Of a stretch of 64,000 bases of DNA, positions 1-7,716 are shown in pieces (position 1 is the first letter of the stretch; every line of letters begins with the position of its first letter). Under the pieces are notes generated by a model. The model did no database searches and was not told where the DNA came from. It saw nothing but the letters and a program-made list of their open reading frames with translations. The stretch lies in the sequence record MN794232.1. One strand, given 5' to 3'. The translations under genes and the position numbers were made by a program.

Positions 1-256
1 TATGTTATACTATTGGACTACGTTTGTGGAGACCACTCTTGTTTCGCACACGGATTCGCTAGATACACAAATTCTGAGCGCAGAAAATCGCTGCGTAAAA
101 TCATATCAGAATGTGTATTCGAATGTGTCATGGAAACTCTCTAAACGTTAAAATAAAAATGTTTTTGTTTGTATAATAGTACTTATAACACCAAATTTGA
201 CGATTTGCGGTATTTTCGCAGAAAATTGAAAAAAAAATCAACTTTCTGCGATTTTC

Positions 257-502
257 TTATCGACCTAGGTGTTTTCGCTTGTTCATTTCAACGAGGATTT
301 CATCGTTGTAATGACGGTTCAGTTCAACATACTTCTTGTGCTGATCTGAAGTCAACTCGTTGGTGTCATTCAGATGTTTCAAGAATCCAAGAGGTTTGCG
401 AAACGACTTGCGATATTCGTTCAGACGCTCGTCCGTTAGATTATGCAGTTGTTTCGGAGTCAGTAACGTTTTATTGATGTCAAAACTCATGTTGTACCTC
501 AC
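257..502 (-). CDS. hypothetical protein (81 aa) within the tRNA operon
   Basis: ORF track; GAGGT SD upstream of ATG; starts just 3' of the tRNA-like gene at 516-631. Confidence 0.7.
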   Translation of the reverse strand: MRYNMSFDINKTLLTPKQLHNLTDERLNEYRKSFRKPLGFLKHLNDTNELTSDQHKKYVELNRHYNDEILVEMNKRKHLGR

Positions 503-515
503 TTGTTATTAAAAT

Positions 516-631
516 TGGTAGTCGGGGCTGGATTCGAACCAGCGACCACGTGCTTAACAGGCAATTGAAGGAGTGCTGGAGCGATACTTGACAGTATCAT
601 TCTTCGTGCTCTACCACTGAGCTACCCGACT
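516..631 (-). tRNA. tRNA-Asn(GTT) scaffold with a 41-nt insertion between positions 28 and 29
   Basis: Acceptor AGTCGGG/CCCGACT, A73, encoded CCA; D arm GCTC-AGTGGTA-GAGC; T arm GCTGG-TTCGAAT-CCAGC. Removing 41 nt joins CG+TGC, which pairs perfectly with GCACG around loop CT-GTT-AA. Confidence 0.75.
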
Positions 632-636
632 ATGAA

Positions 637-1158
637 TTATTTAACTTTGAACTTCAAATTACGCCAGTCAAAGTTTCGTTTGTTCTTTGTGTTGTAGAAC
701 GTGCCCCAATCAATAGCAATCGGACAGTTCTTACTACCTACACGAGCGATAAAGACATCGTGAGTCTCGCTGTAACGCTCTCTAAGCTCTTTTAAACGCT
801 TATCGTAGTTAGCGATATACTCTGCACACGCTTTGTTGTAAGCTGCTTTAGAGAAGCGTTCGTCACTCGAAAATACATTACCCAGATAAGGTCGAATAAC
901 ACGAACTCGTTCTTTAGACCAACCCATACTAAAGCTGTTTTCAATCTCACCTGAGATTTCACCAGTCTTCTTACATCTAGCAAGAATGACCCAGCAACGT
1001 TCACGCCGAAAATCTTTTCGTACGTACACGTTAACGTGCTTGTCAATGTACTCTTGATAACGAGCGTTATACTCAGCACGCAGTTTATTGCGCACTTCAG
1101 GCGACATTGCAGCCCGTTCTTCTTTCGAAAACGCTTGTGCGAATTTCAATGGTTTCAT
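637..1158 (-). CDS. hypothetical protein (173 aa; start reassigned to MKPLKF)
   Basis: The longer track start lies inside the T arm of the upstream RNA; GAGGAA SD precedes the ATG at 1158. Confidence 0.75.
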   Translation of the reverse strand: MKPLKFAQAFSKEERAAMSPEVRNKLRAEYNARYQEYIDKHVNVYVRKDFRRERCWVILARCKKTGEISGEIENSFSMGWSKERVRVIRPYLGNVFSSDERFSKAAYNKACAEYIANYDKRLKELRERYSETHDVFIARVGSKNCPIAIDWGTFYNTKNKRNFDWRNLKFKVK

Positions 1159-1171
1159 TATAATTTCCTCT

Positions 1172-1411
1172 TGGCGCCGCTCGTGTGAATCGAACACACG
1201 TCAAACACAACACCTCGTCCACCCAATTAGAGTTTCGAAGTAAGAGCTAATCAGCATTTCGGAGCAGTCGAGCGTTATTTCTACGAGTGAGCTTTCGACA
1301 ACTCACACGCACTTTCTACCCGGTCCCAGTGATTCGGTACCAACGCAGGTTGCGAACCTACGTCTGCACTAATGCTGGGAAAACACTGCGTATTGTACAC
1401 CAGTTAGCGGC
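1172..1411 (-). ncRNA. 240-nt structured RNA with tRNA-like ends (tmRNA-like topology)
   Basis: 5' GCCGCT pairs with 3' AGCGGC-G-CCA; T arm GTGTG-TTCGATT-CACAC preceded by GAC; stemless D-like loop ACTGGTG; several internal helices; fills the gap between two ORFs. Confidence 0.7.
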
Positions 1412-1413
1412 AT

Positions 1414-1644
1414 TTAAAGATAGCTATCAAAGACAGCATCATCAACTTCTTCAATATTGATGTCAGCGTAACACTCATTCGCAATTGCTTGAATTTCATC
1501 TATTGAAACTGTACCTGCGTACAATACAACAGCGTCGTTCGGAATCACGACATCACACATGTATTTGTTAAACATTGCAGTTCTGAAATCAGAATCAACA
1601 GAGTAACCGTGCATTGATGTGATAACTAGCAATTTATGTGACAT
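1414..1644 (-). CDS. hypothetical protein (76 aa)
   Basis: ORF track; GAGG SD; directly downstream of a sigma70-type promoter. Confidence 0.75.
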   Translation of the reverse strand: MSHKLLVITSMHGYSVDSDFRTAMFNKYMCDVVIPNDAVVLYAGTVSIDEIQAIANECYADINIEEVDDAVFDSYL

Positions 1645-1674
1645 AATGTTTTCCTCGTGTAGTTGATAATGTGT

Positions 1675-1703
1675 ATACTACACGTTGATGAAACGCCTGT
1701 CAA
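1675..1703 (-). promoter_or_regulatory. sigma70-type early promoter
   Basis: TTGACA-17 nt-TAGTAT with an A-rich UP element upstream. Confidence 0.75.
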
Positions 1704-1723
1704 CAACTTTTTCAAATTATTTT

Positions 1724-1800
1724 TGGTAGCCCCTCTCGGATTCGAACCGAGAACCTGACGATTATGAGTCGTCTGCTACTACCGTTACAGCTAAGGGGCT
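1724..1800 (-). tRNA. tRNA with CAT anticodon (elongator Met or Ile2)
   Basis: Canonical 77-nt cloverleaf: AGCCCCT/AGGGGCT, GACGA-CTCATAA-TCGTC, CTCGG-TTCGAAT-CCGAG, encoded CCA. Confidence 0.92.
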
Positions 1801-2167
1801 ATCGTTCTAGAAATCTACCGACTTTAGCAGCGAAGATGTTTGCTTCTTCTGCAATCAAAGCAGTTGATTTCATTTGATGAAAAGCGTCTTGTTGATGCAG
1901 AACATCTAGTTTACCAGCGCATTTCATCAGTTCTTTTACTGATTGCATAATCTCAATGTTATCAAGCTGACTCGTGTCAGGGTGATGATTGAGACTATCC
2001 AAGACAGGGAGTACTTGTTGATAGTAACCCATGCCGATGAAGTTTATCATAAGTCTGTACTGCATTTCAACAGCAAATGTACAATATTTTCGAAGATTGC
2101 GTTTTACAATCTCACAGCGATGTAAGATACAATCAAGTTCGTCATTTATGTCATCAAACTTATTCAT
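1799..2167 (-). CDS. hypothetical protein (122 aa; start reassigned to MNKFDD)
   Basis: The track start lies in the T arm of the upstream tRNA-like gene; GAGG SD precedes the ATG at 2167. Confidence 0.75.
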   Translation of the reverse strand: MNKFDDINDELDCILHRCEIVKRNLRKYCTFAVEMQYRLMINFIGMGYYQQVLPVLDSLNHHPDTSQLDNIEIMQSVKELMKCAGKLDVLHQQDAFHQMKSTALIAEEANIFAAKVGRFLER

Positions 2168-2181
2168 AAAACCTCGAAAAT

Positions 2182-2301
2182 TGGTGGAGAGTGATGGATT
2201 TGAACCACCGACCAAAAGATTTACCAGTTAAGGTTTGCAGCATGAATGCTTGTCAGTATTCTTTAACATTCTTTTGCTCTACCAGACTGAGCTAACTCTC
2301 C
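2182..2301 (-). ncRNA. 120-nt tRNA-like RNA (Thr GGT-like loop) with expanded anticodon arm
   Basis: GGAGAGT/ACTCTCC-A-CCA; D arm GCTC-AGTCTGGTA-GAGC; T arm GGTGG-TTCAAAT-CCATC; about 45 extra nt carrying the shared module before CT-GGT-AA. Confidence 0.75.
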
Positions 2302-2306
2302 ATTGT

Positions 2307-2417
2307 ATTACTACTTTGTTTCGCTTGTCAGGGCGTCGAAACGCTACCTAACCAAGGATTCGAACCTTTTAACCAACACCTCGCGAAAATTATTTTTCTC
2401 GTTGGCAAAGTAGTAAT
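2307..2417 (-). ncRNA. 111-nt structured RNA with an internal T-loop hairpin
   Basis: Perfect 12-bp closing helix ATTACTACTTTG/CAAAGTAGTAAT; AAGG-TTCGAAT-CCTT; GCGT-TTCG-ACGC; no ORF. Confidence 0.55.
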
Positions 2418-2431
2418 GTAAAAACATATAG

Positions 2432-2554
2432 TTGCGGGTGCAGGATTCGAACCTACATCACGATCTTATGAATGATATGCGAAATTGATTGCCGTACAGA
2501 TTCTTATCAGAATCAGTTTTGTGCTACGTGTGCTACCACTTACACCAACCCGCA
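2432..2554 (-). ncRNA. fMet-like tRNA scaffold (CAT) with 50-nt insertion, no encoded CCA
   Basis: TGCGGGT/ACCCGCA-A then CTA; D arm GTGT/GCAC; CG[50 nt]ATC pairs with GATCG around an 8-nt loop ATTCATAA; acceptor extended to 15 bp (2425-2562). Confidence 0.7.
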
Positions 2555-2625
2555 ACTATATGCTTTCGGGATGCTTACGCAGGTTCTTCTCTACGTAAGC
2601 ACAGTTCCTCAATGTATATTTTGCC

Positions 2626-2790
2626 TTAGCCAATCACAACACAACCCAACCCAATATCGTGCGCTTTAATTACGGGATTGATGACCCGTTCGCATGTGAT
2701 TAGCGTAAAAGTATGATTACGCACCTTTTCTTCTTCAATGTCCAAGGCAAAGAGGACTATGAATACTAGTGCGAGAAGATATACAATCAA
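2626..2790 (-). CDS. possible small membrane protein (54 aa, TTG start)
   Basis: GAGGTG SD before TTG; hydrophobic N-terminus IVYLLALVFIVLFAL; region also has hairpins and could be non-coding. Confidence 0.35.
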   Translation of the reverse strand: MIVYLLALVFIVLFALDIEEEKVRNHTFTLITCERVINPVIKAHDIGLGCVVIG

Positions 2791-2823
2791 ATTGCTCACC
2801 TCGCTTAATAAGTGAGAGTACAT

Positions 2824-2946
2824 TGGTCGAGTGTAACGGAATCGAACCGTTCCCACGATCTCCCTATGATATGCGTAAATTGGTTGCTGAATATAATCAT
2901 GTCTGATTACAGTATGCTACGTGTGCTGCCACTACACCAACACTCG
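2824..2946 (-). ncRNA. Pro-like tRNA scaffold (AGG) with 49-nt insertion
   Basis: CGAGTGT/ACACTCG-A-CCA; D arm GTGT-AGTGGCA-GCAC; CG[49 nt]ATC-ATAGGGA-GATCG; T arm AACGG-TTCGATT-CCGTT; terminal helix extended to 21 bp (2814-2960). Confidence 0.72.
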
Positions 2947-2961
2947 ACCAATGTACTCTCG

Positions 2962-3113
2962 ATATTTTAAATGTGCGCTACTTGCACGCCGACTGAGCGA
3001 ATTTTAACTCAGCTAGTTTTTGATTGAGACCTCGTCCGCTAAGACTATTCCCTGCACGCCAGAACTTATACTGGCTCTATGTATTCATTGCGGCTAACGC
3101 ACATTTAAAATAT
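2962..3113 (-). ncRNA. 152-nt structured RNA of unknown class
   Basis: Perfect 16-bp closing helix ATATTTTAAATGTGCG/CGCACATTTAAAATAT; two internal hairpins each followed by GGCGTGCA; no ORF. Confidence 0.55.
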
Positions 3114-3114
3114 T

Positions 3115-3219
3115 ACTCATCTTCAGCGAAGAGACAGAAACGATGAGTCTAGTCTGTTTAATCAATGTTGTTCATCTTCAAGAAGAGGCGAGAACGATGA
3201 ACTCAGCTCGCTTAATCAA
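3115..3219 (-). repeat. two tandem 55-nt H-type pseudoknot repeats
   Basis: TTGATTAA-GCGAG-CTGA-GTTCATC-GTT-CTCGC-CTCTTCTTGAA-GATGAAC and TTGATTAA-ACAGA-CTAG-ACTCATC-GTT-TCTGT-CTCTTCGCTGAA-GATGAGT; stems co-vary between copies. Confidence 0.7.
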
Positions 3220-3227
3220 CTGTGTTA

Positions 3228-3255
3228 ATCTTATCAGCTTCTCAGCGAAAGTCAA
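3228..3255 (-). promoter_or_regulatory. sigma70-type promoter driving the repeat/ncRNA/tRNA operon
   Basis: TTGACT-16 nt-TAAGAT with A-rich UP element. Confidence 0.65.
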
Positions 3256-3319
3256 CATCTTTTTCAAATATTTCATCGAGTTGAAAGTTTGTTTTCTGTC
3301 TCTCGACTCGATGAAATAC

Positions 3320-3347
3320 ATTCTACATCCTTTTCAGATGAAGTCAA
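3320..3347 (-). promoter_or_regulatory. second (upstream) sigma70-type promoter
   Basis: TTGACT-16 nt-TAGAAT; followed by a long hairpin at 3269-3318. Confidence 0.65.
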
Positions 3348-3363
3348 CAACTATTTTAACTTT

Positions 3364-3627
3364 TTAAACGGAAATGATAATGCCGCTTTCAGTCTCACCT
3401 CGTTCAAGCGCAGCGTGCTTGATCTGAAGTTGTGATACTGCTTGCTGAAGTTCAATAATAGCTTTGTCATAAAGCTTGTTGTTCTCTTTAAGCAAAGCAA
3501 TCTGATCGGTCTGCATACCAATGATGTACGTTAGTAGAACAACGTTCTCATCAGTCGTCAGCGTTTCAGGCGCTTCATTGTACTTCTTCAGCACCGCTTC
3601 GGTAGATAGATCAGTCATTATTAGCAA
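3364..3627 (-). CDS. hypothetical coiled-coil protein (87 aa)
   Basis: ORF track; overlaps the end of 57B; heptad-like central region. Confidence 0.7.
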   Translation of the reverse strand: MLIMTDLSTEAVLKKYNEAPETLTTDENVVLLTYIIGMQTDQIALLKENNKLYDKAIIELQQAVSQLQIKHAALERGETESGIIISV

Positions 3628-4066
3628 CCCATTCTAGATCTAGTGGTTCGATATATTCATCGACAAGGCGAACCTCTGTATTGATGAACATAGGTGTGAT
3701 TACGTCGTCATAAGATAATGTGACGTGCGGAGTATAGTCAGGGTAATCGTGAGTACCACCGATAGAGATAAGGTCTTCGTGACGTTCTACAAGAGCAGGA
3801 CATGACATCTTAGCAACGACCGCGTGTTTACCGTCTTGCGTTTTCCAACAGTCAACTTGTTCAACAGTGGCAACGAAAGTGGTATCTACAACAGGCACAT
3901 CAATTTGCTTACGACTATAAAGCACAGTCACGTGAAATTTATCTGGATCTAACGGATTTTTTAGACGAAGCGTTTTTTGCAAGCGAACTAGCTCTTGCTT
4001 ACTTGCTTCGTCTAATTTGATACCAACGTAAGTTCCCTGACTCTCAAGGAACTTAGATAGTTTCAT
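3611..4066 (-). CDS. 57B: gp57B / Acb1-family 2H phosphoesterase (anti-CBASS cyclic nucleotide nuclease homologue)
   Basis: Two HxT motifs (FHVTVLYS, PHVTLSY), WKTQDG and EPLDLEW as in T4 gp57B; synteny 1-57A-57B. Confidence 0.9.
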   Translation of the reverse strand: MKLSKFLESQGTYVGIKLDEASKQELVRLQKTLRLKNPLDPDKFHVTVLYSRKQIDVPVVDTTFVATVEQVDCWKTQDGKHAVVAKMSCPALVERHEDLISIGGTHDYPDYTPHVTLSYDDVITPMFINTEVRLVDEYIEPLDLEWVANND

Positions 4067-4332
4067 TATTCAGCTTCTTTCTCTTTTTCGCCGTCGCCTT
4101 CTACAGGGCGTTCAGCTTTACCGGTTAGATAAGCGACTTCATCAACATAGTTCTGTAGAGAACTTGCTTTTTCTTGATCGAAGTCTAGCAGTTGAGCTAG
4201 TACACCAACGAATTGACCAAATGAATTGCGTTCAGCTTGAAGTGCTTCTTGCAAGTCAAATGTACGAACTTTCAGATCTTTGATTTGCGCTTCTTTCTGT
4301 TCGATTACTTGTTCTGGAGTTTGTTGTGACAT
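4066..4332 (-). CDS. 57A: gp57A tail fibre assembly chaperone
   Basis: 88-aa acidic coiled-coil protein between gene 1 and 57B (T4 synteny). Confidence 0.75.
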   Translation of the reverse strand: MSQQTPEQVIEQKEAQIKDLKVRTFDLQEALQAERNSFGQFVGVLAQLLDFDQEKASSLQNYVDEVAYLTGKAERPVEGDGEKEKEAE

Positions 4333-4341
4333 TTCTTCACC

Positions 4342-4980
4342 TTAAAATAATTTGTTGATTTGTTCATGTAGTTCTTCAAGAGAACCATTATTGTCTATTT
4401 GAATTGCGTCTTCAATAAAACCCAATTCAGTATCGCTAACGTGATTAGATGCAAGCGAACCTTCTCGGTTAACTTGAAGCATCGTGCCACCAAGCTCTTG
4501 TACCAATTCTAATTCGTTTTGAAAACGAACATCAGTGATTATAAACACCAAATCCGGGTTTTTAAACACTAGCTCATTGTATTTATTACGTGCGTAATTG
4601 ATCCAATGTTGTTCATCAAGCGAACGTGCAACGTCAGTGCCAGTCATTTGCAGTAAATCACGAATGCTGAACAGTTTCGTGTGAGGGAGCAACGTGTAGT
4701 AGACATAATCATAATCAGCGTCTACATTTGCGTACTCACAACAAGTCAAAACAAGTTCAATTGCTTCGTCGAGGGTAAATGTCGGGACTTCTCTATCAAA
4801 ATTGTTTTGCCCGTCGATGTCTGCATACTCATAGCCATATTCTTTCAATCCAATGTACAAACCCTCTTTAATCGGGTCTGCAAACTTGTAAATGTAAGCA
4901 TTATCACTATGAATATCTTGAATGGCTTGAGCTACAGTATCTTTGCCTGAGCGTTTTTGTCCATTTATTCCTATTATCAT
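4342..4980 (-). CDS. 1: gp1 deoxynucleoside monophosphate kinase
   Basis: P-loop IIGINGQKRSGKDT, FADPIKE, RDLLQMTGTD, ITDVRFQNE, HVSD. Confidence 0.95.
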   Translation of the reverse strand: MIIGINGQKRSGKDTVAQAIQDIHSDNAYIYKFADPIKEGLYIGLKEYGYEYADIDGQNNFDREVPTFTLDEAIELVLTCCEYANVDADYDYVYYTLLPHTKLFSIRDLLQMTGTDVARSLDEQHWINYARNKYNELVFKNPDLVFIITDVRFQNELELVQELGGTMLQVNREGSLASNHVSDTELGFIEDAIQIDNNGSLEELHEQINKLF

Positions 4981-5016
4981 AATGAGTTACCAGTCAATAG
5001 TGTGTTTCGTCTCTTG

Positions 5017-5200
5017 ATTATACGACGAAAGTGCTATCTTCTAAACATGCACCAGGCATACTAGTTTCTCTAATATTTCTAATATCTCTAACTTCACTAA
5101 AACTACTAATACTACTAAGATGATGCCCAATTTTTGGGCCTCAAATCCAATCCTGCCGCTTCGCTCTAGATTCAGATACAAAAAAGCCCCGAAAGGGGCT
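5017..5200 (-). repeat. composite intergenic element copy 1 (terminator, GCGAAGC, hairpin, 7 TTAG/CTAG units at 9-bp period, GTTTAGA-17-TATAAT promoter)
   Basis: CTAG/CTAA on plus at 5061, 5070, 5079, 5088, 5097, 5106, 5115; similar to 31051-31220 and 57351-57496. Confidence 0.8.
5180..5200 (-). terminator. intrinsic terminator after gene 3
   Basis: AGCCCC-TTTC-GGGGCT followed by a T tract on the minus strand. Confidence 0.85.
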
Positions 5201-5212
5201 TATTGCTTTTTA

Positions 5213-5746
5213 CTAACCCATATAGGGTGTGATGACTTCTTCTTTGCCATCGACTTTATGGATCATTTCAAAGTACGAGTATTCAAACTCAACATCACAC
5301 GTTACAGTTTCAACATCACCTGCTTCAGTGTAGTTCCATTCAATAGCACTTAGAGACTTTGGAAACGCATTGACAAAGCGATACGTTGCAACAATCTTGT
5401 CTTTGTTATTGTCTAAAACATGAAGCAACATAGTAACTGGAACAATCCCGTCACTTGTACTAGCACCAGTTGGGTTATTCATAGTGATTAACCACTTGTA
5501 TAACTCAGCATACGTACGCATTTCTTCATCGACTAGAAACTGAATAGACAGGTCATCGTAAGATGTACCAGAACCTGCTACATGGTTGTTTGCTAGTTTG
5601 GCATACTTGGGACCTCGTGTAATACTTGCAATTTCCATATTAACACCCGGGATAGTGGCAGTTTGAATCTGCCACTGGAACGTTTGTGTTGCGTTATTAT
5701 CTGGGATGTCGATTCGGAAATTATTCTTCATCGTCAAGTTTTTCAT
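5213..5746 (-). CDS. 3: gp3 tail tube terminator / tail completion protein
   Basis: NNFRIDIPD, QTATIPGV, YDDLSIQFLVDEEMRTY, CDVEFEYSYF. Confidence 0.92.
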   Translation of the reverse strand: MKNLTMKNNFRIDIPDNNATQTFQWQIQTATIPGVNMEIASITRGPKYAKLANNHVAGSGTSYDDLSIQFLVDEEMRTYAELYKWLITMNNPTGASTSDGIVPVTMLLHVLDNNKDKIVATYRFVNAFPKSLSAIEWNYTEAGDVETVTCDVEFEYSYFEMIHKVDGKEEVITPYMG

Positions 5747-7716
5747 TAGTTCACGTTACCTCTTGTAGACGGGATCTTAGCTTCACCACTTGTAGTCAAT
5801 GGACGAGTGAAGTTGGTTGTATTTTGCACTGAGCTTACAGCGTTGTTGACGAAGTTCGTCCCAACTTCTTTTGTTTGCTGTGCTGCTCTGTATGCTGCTT
5901 CACGCGCTGCTACAGCTTCTAAGATTACTGAACGCTTAATCTCTTGGAATGGCTTAATCAAGCCCTCTTCAATCATGCGTTGTCTCTCAGCCGCAACAAT
6001 AGCGTCTTCTTGCATTTGCTTCTTCTCAACTTCAGCCGCTAGGAACTTGTCTAACGATTCGGTTGAACTTGCTAATGACTCGACAGGTCGTTTGATTGCA
6101 TCGGCAGCGTTCTTAGCACCGTCTATAACCGCTTGTGCTGTATTCTTAGCACCGTCTACGATCATATCCCCTGCTTTCCCTAGATAGTCAGTTTGATAGC
6201 GTGCATTGAGTCTGTCCTTGACTTCAGCCTTGCTTGCGTCAATACGCGCTCGGTTGCCTTCGATGTCTGCGCCAGCAATGAACTTCTCCATGCCTTCCGA
6301 CTTCAGAAAATCAGGTAGTGCATTTAATGCATTCACGACGAACTCTTTAACGTTTAACATTAGGTCATCTATTGCTAACATAAGAAGTCTGAATGAGTCA
6401 GGAATTGATAGCCAACTTGCAATGATCTTATTAACCGCATTGACATACATTTGAAACGCACTTCTAACGAAAGAAGTTACTTTCTCGAAGCCAGATACGA
6501 TTCCCTCAACTGCGCCTTCTGGTACAGCGTCTTTGATGTTTTCACCAACGATTCCAAACCATTCACCAATCCCTCGAACCATATCCGTGAACCAGTTCGA
6601 GATTATACTGAATAGCATTGCTCGTTTTTCGGGGTCGCTAAAAATGTTCTTCAGTGCGGCGAAGATTCTGTCTAGCTCTTCTTCGAAGATTTTGTAAATA
6701 CCATAACCTGCAACCATTGCAACTAGAGCCGCTGGGTTTAGCATTATCGCAACCATTCTACCTAGACCTAAGAATAATTGACGAACAACCGTCCACATCC
6801 ACCCTTTTATGGTGCCGCTCATATCAGTAGCAAGTGCTTGAACGATATTACCCGTTCCTTTACTGAACTTACCGAATCCTAGAAGAATGTTAGATGCGAT
6901 TTTCCCGAGTGTTCCGAATTTTGTTGCAGTCGAAGCAGCCATTGCCATTGATGTACTAAATGTCACCAATTGACCACCTAACATAACCAACCCAACACCG
7001 ACAAGTCTGAATAATTTAGCAATCCAGCCTAGTTTTTCGCCAGCAAGGTGATTCGCGATACGTCGCAGATCACTAGCTTGATTGCGCTGAACTTTCATAT
7101 TCTCTTTGTAGCGTAGTTGTTCAGTCTTACGATTGCGAGTTTCGGTAACTACTTGATACGCGAAAATCTTCTTGTACAATGCGCTTATAAAGCCCACAGT
7201 CAACGGGGCGTTATTACCTGCACCGTTCTGTAGGAAACTGTTTAAATCGTCGGCAGCCGTCTTCTGAAGCCCTATAACTCGCTTCATGTCGTTGACTCTA
7301 AAGATCAGACGTTCAAACCAACGATTAAAGCCCTCCTGCATACGTGCGAACTGCATTTTTGCAGTTAAGCGCATTTCTTGAATGCCACGATCAATACGAG
7401 ACAAATGTCCTTTAAAGTCAAGAGTAGTCTTGATAATATCCGTTAGTGATATAATCGAAGCACGAACTTTATTGGAAGTTTGCTCAAAGTTTTCGATAAC
7501 GCGCTGAAACAGATTCTTTTGCTGCGCCACCGCCTTTTCGTTTGTTTTAAACACCGACTGCATAGTTTCGAGCATAGACGTGGTCGTAATATCAATGTTG
7601 TTGATATGACGAGCGACACGCTGCATCGTATAAACTTCAGGTCGGTCTTCTTGTTGGAGAATGATATGATCTAATCTTCCGATTATCTCATTCATTTTCT
7701 TGTCGTCAGCCGCCAT
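5746..7716 (-). CDS. 29: gp29-like tape measure / baseplate hub protein (656 aa)
   Basis: Long helical protein with central hydrophobic Gly/Ala-rich segment, next to 51/26; assignment by composition and context. Confidence 0.65.
   Translation of the reverse strand: MAADDKKMNEIIGRLDHIILQQEDRPEVYTMQRVARHINNIDITTTSMLETMQSVFKTNEKAVAQQKNLFQRVIENFEQTSNKVRASIISLTDIIKTTLDFKGHLSRIDRGIQEMRLTAKMQFARMQEGFNRWFERLIFRVNDMKRVIGLQKTAADDLNSFLQNGAGNNAPLTVGFISALYKKIFAYQVVTETRNRKTEQLRYKENMKVQRNQASDLRRIANHLAGEKLGWIAKLFRLVGVGLVMLGGQLVTFSTSMAMAASTATKFGTLGKIASNILLGFGKFSKGTGNIVQALATDMSGTIKGWMWTVVRQLFLGLGRMVAIMLNPAALVAMVAGYGIYKIFEEELDRIFAALKNIFSDPEKRAMLFSIISNWFTDMVRGIGEWFGIVGENIKDAVPEGAVEGIVSGFEKVTSFVRSAFQMYVNAVNKIIASWLSIPDSFRLLMLAIDDLMLNVKEFVVNALNALPDFLKSEGMEKFIAGADIEGNRARIDASKAEVKDRLNARYQTDYLGKAGDMIVDGAKNTAQAVIDGAKNAADAIKRPVESLASSTESLDKFLAAEVEKKQMQEDAIVAAERQRMIEEGLIKPFQEIKRSVILEAVAAREAAYRAAQQTKEVGTNFVNNAVSSVQNTTNFTRPLTTSGEAKIPSTRGNVN

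What the first reader, a model, noticed from the sequence alone, without database searches (positions are those of the whole stretch)
516..2960. Four different tRNA scaffolds carry the same structured 41-50 nt module beside the anticodon
Seen: four minus-strand genes (516-631, 2182-2301, 2432-2554, 2824-2946) have intact acceptor, D and T arms but an insert on the 5' side of the anticodon. The inserts align with fixed spacing: 5-bp hairpin with 6-nt loop, 4-nt linker, C-N-GCA-(A/C), 2 nt, then mostly a closing stem. The cores are GATAC-TGTCAA-GTATC-GCTC-CAGCAC, AATAC-TGACAA-GCATT-CATG-CTGCAA, GATTC-TGATAA-GAATC-TGTA-CGGCAA and TAATC-AGACAT-GATTA-TATT-CAGCAA. Stem sequences differ but stay paired (one mismatch in copy 2), while loop and CNGCA are conserved, as expected under selection on structure. 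Scaffolds differ (Asn, Thr-like, fMet-like, Pro-like), so this is not one gene decaying after duplication. Established: T4 makes stable non-tRNA RNAs (species 1 and 2) from its tRNA cluster, and KVP40-type clusters include pseudo-tRNAs. Inference: these are tRNA-shielded aptamer or decoy RNAs (for example for host anticodon nucleases or a ligand) or a new class of minimal tRNA introns, and tRNA scanners would mislabel them as pseudogenes.
Basis: partly seen in the sequence, partly recalled or inferred. Interest (0 to 1): 0.92.

Follow-up and report, generated by a model that had tools for sequence, protein, structure and literature searches.

The report
Ro60-linked RNA handle inside phage tRNAs
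Four tRNA-shaped genes of this KVP40-type Vibrio phage each carry, inside the anticodon stem, a small conserved RNA "handle" that many phages encode next to their Ro60-like protein gene and that closely resembles the Class I RNAs of Dictyostelium, so they are probably tRNA-mimicking partner RNAs (or specially handled tRNAs) and not dead pseudogenes.

Summary
The window is Vibrio phage VH1_2019. Four minus-strand genes have normal acceptor, D and T arms plus a 41-50 nt insert. Three inserts lie between nucleotides 28 and 29 of the anticodon stem, and g2's lies between 31 and 32.

The conserved core is a 5-bp covarying stem, the loop CUGAYAAG (C-G and U-A pairs capping a GNNA tetraloop), a 4-nt linker and CNGCA(A).

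The module is widespread in phage contigs: 79 IMG/VR stretches, nearly all in tRNA genes. The 46 matches in 596 Gb of cellular genomes look like chance.

In many phages the same elements occur "opened", as AAG-stem-N3-4-CNGCAA...stem-CUG. Some are short RNAs that often display an anticodon-like loop. Others are circularly permuted tRNA-like RNAs. These units score below threshold to Rfam Dicty_Class_I_RNA and YrlA.

They usually lie within about 1 kb, on the same strand, of a DUF2828/vWA gene whose AlphaFold model matches Ro60. VH1_2019 has that gene 12.6 kb away.

Best reading: a hairpin-closed Y-RNA/Class-I-type protein handle grafted onto tRNA scaffolds. A spliced mini-intron is not excluded. 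I found no description in the literature I could search or in Rfam 15.

The parts
516..631 (-). g1: tRNA-shaped gene with encoded CCA, loop CUGUUAA (GUU) and discriminator A73. The 5' part is 605-631 and the 3' part is 516-563.
   Evidence: ARAGORN -i; Rfam tRNA 49.8 bits with a 54-nt insertion; my parse. The phage's canonical tRNA-Asn has G73 and a different body.
564..604 (-). g1 insert (41 nt) between nt 28 and 29 of the anticodon stem. Hairpin 583-598 (GAUAC-UGUCAA-GUAUC), linker GCUC, CAGCAC 573-578.
   Evidence: CM R1 31.6 bits. Deleting it restores CGUGC/GCACG. Orthologues in KVP40, ValKK3, nt-1 and K566 keep it with substitutions.
2182..2301 (-). g2: tRNA-shaped gene with encoded CCA and an intact anticodon stem AAAGA/UCUUU. 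The loop is 8 nt (CUGGUAAA). The 5' part is 2270-2301 and the 3' part is 2182-2227.
   Evidence: Rfam tRNA 55.8 bits with a 45-nt insertion; parse. The loop is CUAGGUAAA in KVP40 and CUAAGUAAA in K566. Cronobacter S13 has a 7-nt AUGGUAA version.
2228..2269 (-). g2 insert (42 nt) between nt 31 and 32. Hairpin 2245-2260 (AAUAC-UGACAA-GCAUU, one A.C mismatch), linker CAUG, CUGCAA 2235-2240.
   Evidence: CM R1 33.4 bits; parse.
2432..2554 (-). g3: tRNA-shaped gene with acceptor UGCGGGU/ACCCGCA, A73 and no encoded CCA. The loop is 8 nt, AUUCAUAA (CAU). The 5' part is 2527-2554 and the 3' part is 2432-2476.
   Evidence: ARAGORN -i; parse. Orthologues carry UUUCCAA (ValKK3) and AUUCUAA (K566) on the same body.
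2477..2526 (-). g3 insert (50 nt) between nt 28 and 29. Hairpin 2499-2514 (GAUUC-UGAUAA-GAAUC), linker UGUA, CGGCAA 2489-2494.
   Evidence: CM R1 37.6 bits. Stem changes in orthologues: CAAGC/GUUUG and CAAGU/GCUUG.
2824..2946 (-). g4: tRNA-shaped gene with acceptor CGAGUGU/ACACUCG, A73 and encoded CCA. The loop is AUAGGGA (AGG). The 5' part is 2920-2946 and the 3' part is 2824-2870.
   Evidence: ARAGORN -i; parse. K566 has compensatory acceptor changes and the loop AUUAGGA (UAG).
2871..2919 (-). g4 insert (49 nt) between nt 28 and 29. Hairpin 2894-2909 (UAAUC-AGACAU-GAUUA), linker UAUU, CAGCAA 2884-2889.
   Evidence: CM R1 37.2 bits. The loop-closing U-A is swapped to A-U, which is a compensatory change.

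Best explanation
Each insert is a protein-binding RNA handle, not decay. It is the hairpin-closed form of a module that phages also encode as free RNAs: 5'-AAG, a 5-bp stem strand, 3-4 nt, CNGCAA, a variable cargo, the other stem strand, CUG(A/U/G)-3'. In the window the 3' end (CUGA) and the 5' start (AAG) are joined through one pyrimidine into the loop CUGAYAAG. The cargo is a whole tRNA body with its anticodon loop.

By position and architecture these RNAs are the counterparts of Y RNAs for the phage's Ro60-like protein (DUF2828 plus a vWA domain; VH12019_00154 in this genome). The handle would tether a tRNA or anticodon-loop mimic to that protein. Likely roles are tRNA surveillance or repair, or acting as bait for host enzymes that attack anticodon loops.

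Shown: the module, its covariation, its restriction to phage contigs in this pattern scan, the open and closed topologies, the linkage to a gene whose predicted fold is Ro60-like, and the fast-changing anticodons.

Inferred: that the Ro60-like protein binds the handle, that the RNA acts unspliced, and what the complex does.
For: 1. The module is conserved and structured.

2. It is widespread in phages. There are 79 IMG/VR stretches with 92 matches, of which 70 have the hairpin, in many unrelated tRNA scaffolds. The 46 matches in 596 Gb of cellular genomes look like chance.

3. In 'chain' loci the stem half after one CUGAYAAG pairs with the half before the next one (21 of 23 cases).

4. The resulting units hit Rfam YrlA (up to 37.9 bits, full length) and Dicty_Class_I_RNA (up to 33.7 bits) in alternation. 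All hits are below the gathering scores.

5. The Class I features published by Kjellin 2021 all recur: AAG start, CUGU end, an invariant G-C pair, a 6-bp covarying stem, and the motif CCUUACAGCAA next to the 5' stem strand (PMC7919456).

6. Some long units have a closed acceptor stem, for example L020 CUGUGGG-GAAA-CCCAAAG and KP13-26 6705-6829, so they cannot be ordinary tRNAs. 39 of 51 long units have a T-loop.

7. 27 of 64 short units carry a hairpin with a 7-nt loop, mostly canonical anticodon loops such as CUUUUAA/C, CUUGUAA and CUGAUAA.

8. A DUF2828 gene lies on the same strand as the nearest module in all 30 IMG/VR loci that contain one, and within about 1.1 kb of it in 22 of them. The distance is 540 nt in Cronobacter S13 and 223 nt in Synechococcus phage ZZ01, where the module tRNAs sit apart from the main tRNA cluster.

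9. Open units also flank the gene in JH2, Campylobacter PC14 and Klebsiella KP13-26, and occur in VH1_2019 itself (L139 14145-14204 and 13187-13303).

10. The AlphaFold model of the protein (pLDDT 80.9) has Ro60/TROVE structures as its top 11 Foldseek PDB hits (E 3e-10 to 2e-6, TM up to 0.64). [quoted passage not shown]

11. Orthologous module tRNAs swap anticodons on an otherwise constant body: UUC, GUC, UCU and GUU in L018, L034, L041 and L046; g3 has CAU, UCC or UCU; g4 has AGG or UAG. Four lineages have 8-nt loops. The same phages carry ordinary tRNAs with those anticodons.

12. g1 has A73 where the phage's canonical tRNA-Asn has G73.
Against: - No binding, expression or size data exist.
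- In VH1_2019 and KVP40 the Ro60-like gene is about 12.6 kb from g1, not adjacent. The four genes keep open acceptor ends, three with encoded CCA.
- Most module tRNAs have canonical 7-nt loops with U33 and A37, and a split anticodon stem that becomes perfect if the insert is removed. That is what an intron would look like.
- All Rfam similarities are below gathering scores, and the window copies match only C6, G8, C9, A10 and A11 of the Class I motif.
- The collection of examples was seeded with a pattern that required a T-arm.
- The DUF2828 gene also sits next to tRNA clusters in general.
- The Listeria, Staphylococcus and Mycobacterium phage loci I checked contain DUF2828 but gave no unit with my search.
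Confidence: 0.5

Rival explanations
1. The inserts are short protein-dependent tRNA introns. The handle recruits a phage enzyme set that cuts out the insert and seals the nick in the anticodon stem. Candidates are the DUF458 RNase H-like nuclease next to the Ro60-like gene and an RNA ligase. The product would be working tRNAs whose activity the phage can time or shield.
For: - Removing the insert gives a perfect 5-bp anticodon stem and a cloverleaf in 43 of 61 distinct genes.
- Loops are mostly C/A-U-NNN-A-A, and CCA is encoded in g1, g2 and g4.
- g4 has C1-G72 and A73 with G35 and G36, as in bacterial tRNA-Pro (my own knowledge of identity rules).
- A DUF458 nuclease gene follows the Ro60-like gene in KVP40-type phages. 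It sits in tRNA clusters in S13, ZZ01, X1 and RpAliso, and is present in only 78 phage records.
- Listeria phage AG20 has RtcB and RNA ligase genes near its DUF2828 gene.
Against: - The same handle occurs in free RNAs that have no exons to join and in permuted RNAs with closed acceptor stems.
- Distances from the handle to both junctions vary (5-17 nt and 8-15 nt). The insert positions differ (26|27, 28|29, 31|32, 48|49), and there is no conserved junction sequence or bulge-helix-bulge.
- 8-nt loops recur.
- No insert-free orthologue was seen in six diverged genomes.
- Aeromonas phage phiAS5 has the module, but no DUF458 gene was detected.
- Xanthomonas phage X1 has DUF458, but no module was found in 40 kb.
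Confidence: 0.3
2. CUGA|YAAG is an RNA processing site. Cutting in the loop releases units from long tRNA-cluster transcripts. In the window genes it would split each tRNA into two halves held together by the 5-bp stem and the acceptor stem.
For: - Tandem units are joined exactly by CUGA-Y-AAG.
- Mature Dictyostelium Class I RNAs begin with AAG and end with CUGU.
- In JH2 the units are separated, ending in CUGG and starting with AAG.
Against: The compensatory U-A to A-U change in the g4 loop suggests that an intact, paired hairpin cap is under selection. Dictyostelium units are transcribed singly, so the conserved ends need not come from cleavage. No nuclease is known for such a site.
Confidence: 0.12
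3. They are pseudogenes: tRNA genes disrupted by a small selfish insertion and no longer functional.
For: KVP40 annotates them as tRNA-Pseudo. g2 and g3 have 8-nt loops. A fifth member (Pseudo-5) is absent from this phage.
Against: Both the body and the insert are conserved with compensatory changes over phages that are only about 74% identical here, and across unrelated phage lineages.
Confidence: 0.03

Closest known systems
Dictyostelium Class I RNAs (Rfam RF01414; Kjellin et al. 2021, PMC7919456)
   Same: A short covarying stem with an invariant G-C pair. AAG lies 5' of the stem and CUG(U) 3' of it. A single-stranded ...ACAGCAA motif follows directly after the 5' stem strand, and the rest of the RNA is variable. 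Free-standing phage units score 23-34 bits on the Rfam model.
   Different: The scores are below the gathering score of 41.5. The phage stem has 5 bp, not 6. In the window the two ends are fused into a hairpin loop and the module is buried in a tRNA. Only part of the 11-nt motif is kept in g1-g4. Class I RNAs were reported as unique to dictyostelids, and their known direct binder is an RRM protein (Rnp1A). Whether the resemblance is homology or convergence is open.
Bacterial and phage Y RNAs, YrlA type (Rfam RF02553; Chen et al. 2014, PMC4201824)
   Same: tRNA-like RNAs encoded near a Ro60-type gene on the same strand. A terminal stem with a short conserved motif on the 5' side, then V, T, acceptor-like and D elements. 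Related phage units hit YrlA at 25-38 bits.
   Different: The window genes are not permuted. They keep open acceptor ends and an anticodon hairpin. The motif is CNGCAA, not GNCGAAN0-1G. The scores are below the gathering score of 69. The Ro60-like gene is 12.6 kb away in this phage. The protein falls in Pfam DUF2828/DUF7788, not TROVE.
tRNA introns: archaeal and eukaryal bulge-helix-bulge introns, and bacterial group I introns in anticodon loops
   Same: An intervening sequence near the anticodon whose removal would restore a cloverleaf.
   Different: There is no bulge-helix-bulge. The position is 28|29 or 31|32, not 37|38. At 41-50 nt the insert is far too small for a group I core, and there is no Rfam intron hit.
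'Enigmatic' tRNA introns of Lak megaphages (Devoto et al. 2019; bioRxiv 10.1101/356790)
   Same: Over-long phage tRNAs called pseudo or undetermined, with conserved inserts of unknown mechanism.
   Different: The described Lak insert is said to encode a tRNA-like element. I saw that kind in Ruegeria phage RpAliso, and it does not match the module model. The Lak sequences themselves were not examined.
T4 stable RNAs species 1 and 2 (rnaC, rnaD)
   Same: Non-tRNA stable RNAs at the end of a T4-type tRNA cluster.
   Different: No match to the module model at E <= 1. rnaD only has loosely similar pieces, CUGAGUAAG and CAGCAG, in a different spacing.

Membership tests
tRNA (RF00005) | Cloverleaf with acceptor, D, anticodon and T arms that scores above the gathering score | tested here: met
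   g1 scores 49.8 and g2 55.8 bits against a gathering score of 29, with large insertions. g3 and g4 are found only by ARAGORN intron mode. Their acceptor, D and T pairings were checked by hand and are supported by compensatory changes in K566.
tRNA (RF00005) | Continuous anticodon stem and a 7-nt loop | tested here: not met
   The stem or loop is interrupted by 41-50 nt in all four genes. After notional removal g1 and g4 have 7-nt loops, but g2 and g3 have 8-nt loops.
Dictyostelium Class I RNA (RF01414) | Short stem with an invariant G-C pair, with structure but not sequence conserved | tested here: met
   The 5-bp stem plus the C-G pair is 97.5% paired, with 74 double-sided changes.
Dictyostelium Class I RNA (RF01414) | The stem joins the RNA's own 5' (AAG) and 3' (CUGU) ends | tested here: not met
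   In the window CUGA and AAG are fused into a hairpin loop inside a tRNA. The feature is met by free-standing units elsewhere in VH1_2019, for example L139 14145-14204 AAG-CAAUC...GAUUG-CUGU.
Dictyostelium Class I RNA (RF01414) | 11-nt motif CCUUACAGCAA next to the 5' stem strand | tested here: inconclusive
   The window copies read GCUCCAGCAC, CAUGCUGCAA, UGUACGGCAA and UAUUCAGCAA. C6, G8, C9 and A10 are kept at the right spacing, but U3, U4 and A5 are not. Many other phage copies read (C/G/A)UUACAGCAA.
Dictyostelium Class I RNA (RF01414) | Rfam gathering score of 41.5 bits | tested here: not met
   There is no hit in window 1-6000 at E <= 1. Related phage units score 23.4-33.7 bits.
Y RNA, YrlA type (RF02553) | Encoded within about 4 kb of a Ro60 orthologue, on the same strand | tested here: inconclusive
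   In VH1_2019 the strand is the same but g1 is 12.6 kb from the gene. The feature is met in S13 (540 nt), ZZ01 (223 nt) and 22 IMG/VR loci within about 1.1 kb. The Ro60-like fold rests on AlphaFold and Foldseek.
Y RNA, YrlA type (RF02553) | Permuted order (stem, V, T, closed acceptor-like stem, D, stem) with no anticodon arm | tested here: not met
   The window genes have the normal tRNA order, open acceptor ends and an anticodon hairpin. The feature is met by related long units such as KP13-26 6705-6829.
Y RNA, YrlA type (RF02553) | GNCGAAN0-1G motif near the 5' end, and the Rfam gathering score of 69 | tested here: not met
   The motif here is CNGCAA. There is no YrlA hit in the window. Relatives score 24.6-37.9 bits.
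Y RNA, YrlA type (RF02553) | Bound by the Ro60-type protein | not testable with these tools
   This needs pull-down or gel-shift experiments.
Bulge-helix-bulge tRNA intron | Two 3-nt bulges around a 4-bp helix at the junctions, and a splicing endonuclease | tested here: not met
   Folding of 30 distinct insert regions shows no recurrent junction structure. The flank lengths vary. No endonuclease homologue was looked for.
Group I intron in tRNA | A catalytic core of about 200 nt or more, inserted in the anticodon loop | tested here: not met
   The inserts are 41-50 nt and there is no Rfam intron hit at E <= 1.
T4 rnaC / rnaD | Sequence or structure similarity to T4 species 1 or 2 RNA | tested here: not met
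   Module model R1 finds nothing in T4 69000-74000 at E <= 1.

The most novel reading that the evidence does not exclude
The stem-plus-CNGCAA handle is the RNA half of an ancient partnership with Ro60-like (DUF2828/vWA) proteins that spans tailed phages and eukaryotes. On this reading the Dictyostelium Class I RNAs, whose function is unknown, are the amoeba's Y-RNA equivalents. Phages use the handle to load interchangeable cargos onto the protein: whole tRNA bodies as here, permuted tRNA bodies, or bare anticodon stem-loops. These cargos would act as fast-evolving bait or repair substrates against host anticodon nucleases.
Probability: 0.25. Interest if true: 0.95.

Novelty: new variant of a known kind. 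Interest (0 to 1): 0.86.

Why it matters
These genes have been filed as pseudo-tRNAs since the KVP40 genome was published. If the reading holds, several things follow.
- A large, unannotated RNA family in phage tRNA clusters gets a structure, a search model and a likely protein partner.
- The very common phage Ro60-like gene (701 phage records; more than 7,000 homologues in metagenomes) gets candidate RNA ligands.
- Anticodon switching on a fixed scaffold becomes a testable case of phage-host conflict over tRNAs.
- The Class I RNAs of Dictyostelium, reported as unique to dictyostelids and of unknown mechanism, gain an unexpected relative and a testable hypothesis.

If the inserts are spliced instead, they would be a new kind of bacterial-virus tRNA intron sitting inside a stem.

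Tried and rejected
- T4 rnaC/rnaD kinship: no match with the module model.
- Known ribozymes, riboswitches and introns: nothing in Rfam at E <= 1 over window 1-6000. The resemblance of CUGAYAAG to the hammerhead CUGAUGA, to box C/D and to the P22 boxB loop was considered from memory and dropped, because the partner elements are absent.
- Pairing of CNGCA with the 5' junction or with flanking sequence: seen in g3 and g4 (GUAGC with GCAAC) but not in other lineages.
- Bulge-helix-bulge: not found.
- A DNA-level reading (recombination sites, IS200/IS605-type hairpins): dropped, because the stems covary as RNA helices with G-U pairs and the arms pair in a regular chain.
- The 186-aa protein next to g1 (637-1197, minus) as a universal partner: it is restricted to KVP40-like and S13-like phages, with no Pfam hit for the K566 homologue.
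- The DUF458 RNase H-like protein as an obligatory partner: suggestive but not consistent.
- Identifying the uncultivated contigs by BLAST against isolate phages: no close relatives.
- Sequence searches of the DUF2828 protein against PDB: only non-significant Ro60/TROVE hits. The fold comparison was needed.
- The large protein search returned only close phage relatives and could not tell whether Dictyostelium has a homologue.
- Literature searches found no description of this module. Only the Lak 'enigmatic introns' came up.

Full report
**What the window is.** Bases 400-3200 are 100% identical to Vibrio phage VH1_2019 (MN794232), a KVP40-type Schizotequatrovirus. 61 phage records match, down to about 74% identity. 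The finding lies at the far end of the phage's large minus-strand tRNA cluster. KVP40 annotates the same genes as tRNA-Pseudo-3, -4 and -5.

**The observation.** Default ARAGORN sees only tRNA-Met at 1724-1800. In intron mode it reports four long tRNAs at 516-631, 2182-2301, 2431-2554 and 2824-2946. Rfam's tRNA model passes its threshold for g1 and g2 with 54- and 45-nt insertions, and no other family matches at E <= 1.

Read by hand, all four are regular cloverleaves. For g4 the acceptor is CGAGUGU/ACACUCG followed by A-CCA. K566 carries compensatory changes in that stem.

In g1, g3 and g4 the insert sits between nucleotides 28 and 29. The two bases CG before the insert and the three bases (UGC or AUC) after it together pair perfectly with the 3' strand. 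In g2 the 5' strand AAAGA is intact and the insert follows nucleotide 31. The inserts are 41, 42, 50 and 49 nt.

**The module.** The core is a 5-bp stem, the loop UGNNAA (AGACAU in g4), 4 nt, then CNGCA(A/C).
- In 40 distinct copies the six pairs, including the loop-closing U-A, are 97.5% paired, with 74 double-sided changes. Sliding the partner strand destroys the signal.
- g4's A...U in place of U...A is a compensatory change, so the cap is C-G, U-A and a GNNA tetraloop.
- A covariance model finds exactly four copies in the 64 kb, at 31.6-37.6 bits. The next best is 11.8 bits.
- Nothing conserved pairs with CNGCA or closes the insert.

**Distribution.** I scanned for CTGAYAAG-N8-CNGCA-N15-45-GGTTCRANYC.
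- IMG/VR gave 79 stretches. Of the 92 matches, 70 have the hairpin, and nearly all sit in tRNA genes of many unrelated scaffolds, on contigs of 4-520 kb.
- 596 Gb of bacterial and archaeal genomes gave 46 matches, about what chance predicts. Only 8 have 4 of 5 stem pairs, and I saw no tRNA context.
- So, as far as this pattern can see, the module in tRNA genes is confined to phage contigs.
- Of 61 distinct module tRNAs, 43 fit the 28|29 position exactly. Others are at 31|32, and some RNAs have two modules flanking the anticodon arm.

**Unusual behaviour of the anticodon.** Phages with 15-47 ordinary tRNAs usually have one module tRNA at a syntenic place. Orthologues keep the body and the handle but change the anticodon:
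- UUC, GUC, UCU and GUU in L018, L034, L041 and L046.
- g3 has CAU, UCC or UCU.
- g4 has AGG or UAG.

Four lineages have 8-nt loops of the form A-U-NNNN-A-A. VH1_2019 already has normal tRNAs for Asn(GUU) and Met(CAU), and Pro and Thr tRNAs with other anticodons. g1 has A73 where the normal tRNA-Asn has G73.

**Open forms of the module.** In several loci the two arms around CUGAYAAG do not pair with each other. Instead the arm after one motif pairs with the arm before the next one, in 21 of 23 cases. The arrays therefore consist of units of the form AAG-stem-N3-4-CNGCAA-cargo-stem-CUGA.
- Long units carry a variable region, a T arm, an acceptor-like stem closed by a loop (for example CUGUGGG-GAAA-CCCAAAG) and a D arm. 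That is a circularly permuted tRNA.
- Short units carry about 30-40 nt, which often fold into an anticodon-like hairpin.

Rfam, at E-value thresholds, labels these two kinds in alternation as YrlA (24.6-37.9 bits; gathering 69) and Dicty_Class_I_RNA (23.4-33.7 bits; gathering 41.5).

The published description of Class I RNAs lists a 6-bp terminal stem that covaries, an invariant 5' G pairing with the C of a conserved 3' CUGU, a conserved AAG start, and an 11-nt motif CCUUACAGCAA beside the 5' stem strand (PMC7919456). Every one of these recurs in the phage units. The window's loop CUGA-Y-AAG is simply the 3' end and the 5' start joined together.

A pattern search for open units found them at these places:
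- JH2: 4 units.
- Campylobacter phage PC14: 1 unit.
- Klebsiella phage KP13-26: 2 units, one of them a textbook permuted tRNA.
- ZZ01: 2 units.
- S13: 1 unit.
- VH1_2019 itself, just outside the window: L139 14145-14204 (AAG-CAAUC-UUU-CAGCAA...GAUUG-CUGU) and L139 13187-13303.

Over all loci there are 64 distinct short and 51 long units. 39 of the 51 long units have a T-loop. 27 of the 64 short units have a 4-6 bp stem with a 7-nt loop, mostly canonical anticodon loops such as CUUUUAA/C, CUUGUAA, CUGAUAA and CUGUUAA.

**The neighbouring protein.** Clustering the ORFs of the IMG/VR loci gave one family present in 29 loci. It is DUF2828 plus DUF7788, a vWA-type domain.
- Where it is present, the nearest module is on the same strand, and within about 1.1 kb in 22 of the 30 IMG/VR loci.
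- In S13 and ZZ01 the module tRNAs lie directly downstream of this gene and apart from the main tRNA cluster.
- tblastn finds the family in 701 phage records, including mycobacteriophage genes annotated as 'Ro-like RNA binding protein'.
- Sequence searches against PDB were not significant.
- An AlphaFold model (pLDDT 80.9, pTM 0.77) has Ro60, Rsr and TROVE structures as its top 11 Foldseek hits, over the full length (E 3e-10 to 1.6e-6, TM up to 0.64).

Ro60 proteins bind Y RNAs through a terminal stem. Bacterial YrlA RNAs are tRNA mimics encoded within about 4 kb of the Ro60 gene on the same strand (PMC4201824).

In VH1_2019 the Ro60-like gene is at 168490-169929, followed by a DUF458 RNase H-like gene at 167914-168438. 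Both are on the tRNA strand, 12.6 kb beyond g1.

**Interpretation.** The simplest account is that the insert is a Y-RNA/Class-I-type handle in hairpin-closed form, and that g1-g4 are tRNA bodies carrying it. They would be the non-permuted members of a phage family of partner RNAs for the Ro60-like protein. The cargo shown to the outside is a tRNA or an anticodon loop, and its anticodon changes quickly. This fits surveillance or repair of tRNAs, or bait for host anticodon-directed nucleases. That last step is inference only.

The main rival is splicing. The exons are what a working tRNA would need, and a nuclease gene sits next to the Ro60-like gene. However, DUF458 and the module do not always co-occur, the junctions are not conserved, and free units with the same handle have nothing to be spliced into. 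A processing-site reading and plain decay are less likely.

**Limits.**
- There are no expression or binding data.
- All Rfam similarities are below curated thresholds.
- The example set was seeded with patterns taken from the window.
- DUF2828 genes also lie next to tRNA clusters in general.
- My simple search found no units in the Listeria, Staphylococcus and Mycobacterium phage loci.
- I could not test whether Dictyostelium has a DUF2828 or Ro60-like protein.
- I found no paper or Rfam family describing the module. The nearest is the unexplained 'enigmatic introns' of Lak megaphages.

Noticed in passing
window 1175-1410 (minus): An RNA of about 235 nt that starts GCCGCU and ends with a good T arm (GUGUG-UUCGAUU-CACAC), AGCGGC-G-CCA. 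It has a tRNA-like acceptor and T arm with a large internal region that contains a second T-arm-like hairpin. It is unannotated in KVP40. Rfam gives only a weak tmRNA-type hit to the 3' end (14.8 bits).
   Followed up: partly
window 2302-2430 (minus): The spacer between g3 and g2 holds a T-arm-like GGUUCGAAUCC and a hairpin GUUUCG-ACGCCCUGACAAG-CGAAAC that contains CUGACAAG but has no CNGCA. KVP40 and ValKK3 have a fifth module tRNA (Pseudo-5) here or next to it. K566 has only 10 nt between g3 and g2.
   Followed up: partly
window 2960-3120 (minus): A structured stretch just upstream of g4 (AAAUGUGCGUUAGCCGCAAUG...CGGCGUGCAAGUAGCGCACAUUU). It includes a degenerate handle-like piece, AUG-UGCGU-UAGC-CGCAA...CGUGC-AG, at 3052-3104.
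   Followed up: no
window ~3615-4066 (minus): An ORF with two HxT motifs (FHVTVLY, PHVTLSY), which marks it as a 2H phosphoesterase. It is the homologue of T4 57B, annotated 'RNA ligase' in KVP40. From my own knowledge T4 57B is the anti-CBASS enzyme Acb1.
   Followed up: no
L139 13187-13303 and 14145-14204 (VH1_2019 179186-179302 and 180144-180203, minus strand; outside the window): Two free-standing handle RNAs inside the tRNA cluster. One is 60 nt with Class I architecture (AAG...CUGU). The other is 117 nt with a T arm.
   Followed up: partly
L138 2054-2172 (T4 rnaD): T4 species 2 RNA contains the hairpin GGUUCC-CUGAGUAAG-GAAUU and, 41 nt later, CUUACAUCACAGCAG. These pieces are reminiscent of the handle but in a different spacing. 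The module model does not match.
   Followed up: partly
L137 1101-1222 (Ruegeria phage RpAliso): A tRNA-Gln carries a different insert after the anticodon loop, containing its own T-arm-like hairpin. This resembles the nested-tRNA insert described for Lak megaphages.
   Followed up: no
L009 1620-1705; L035 5045-5404; L031 1-337: A Hatchet ribozyme (68.6 bits, above gathering) and phage-encoded tmRNAs lie next to the handle-RNA arrays in uncultivated phages.
   Followed up: no
L140 7755-9062 and 10622-11509 (Listeria phage AG20): The DUF2828 gene lies in a cluster with genes annotated as a tRNA splicing ligase, an RNA ligase and a metal-dependent phosphohydrolase. That looks like an RNA repair neighbourhood.
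   Followed up: no
L133 5488-6012; L134 19998-20474: The DUF458 RNase H-like proteins of KVP40-type and S13 phages end in a strongly basic Lys/Arg-rich tail, which the metagenomic homologue L033 lacks.
   Followed up: no
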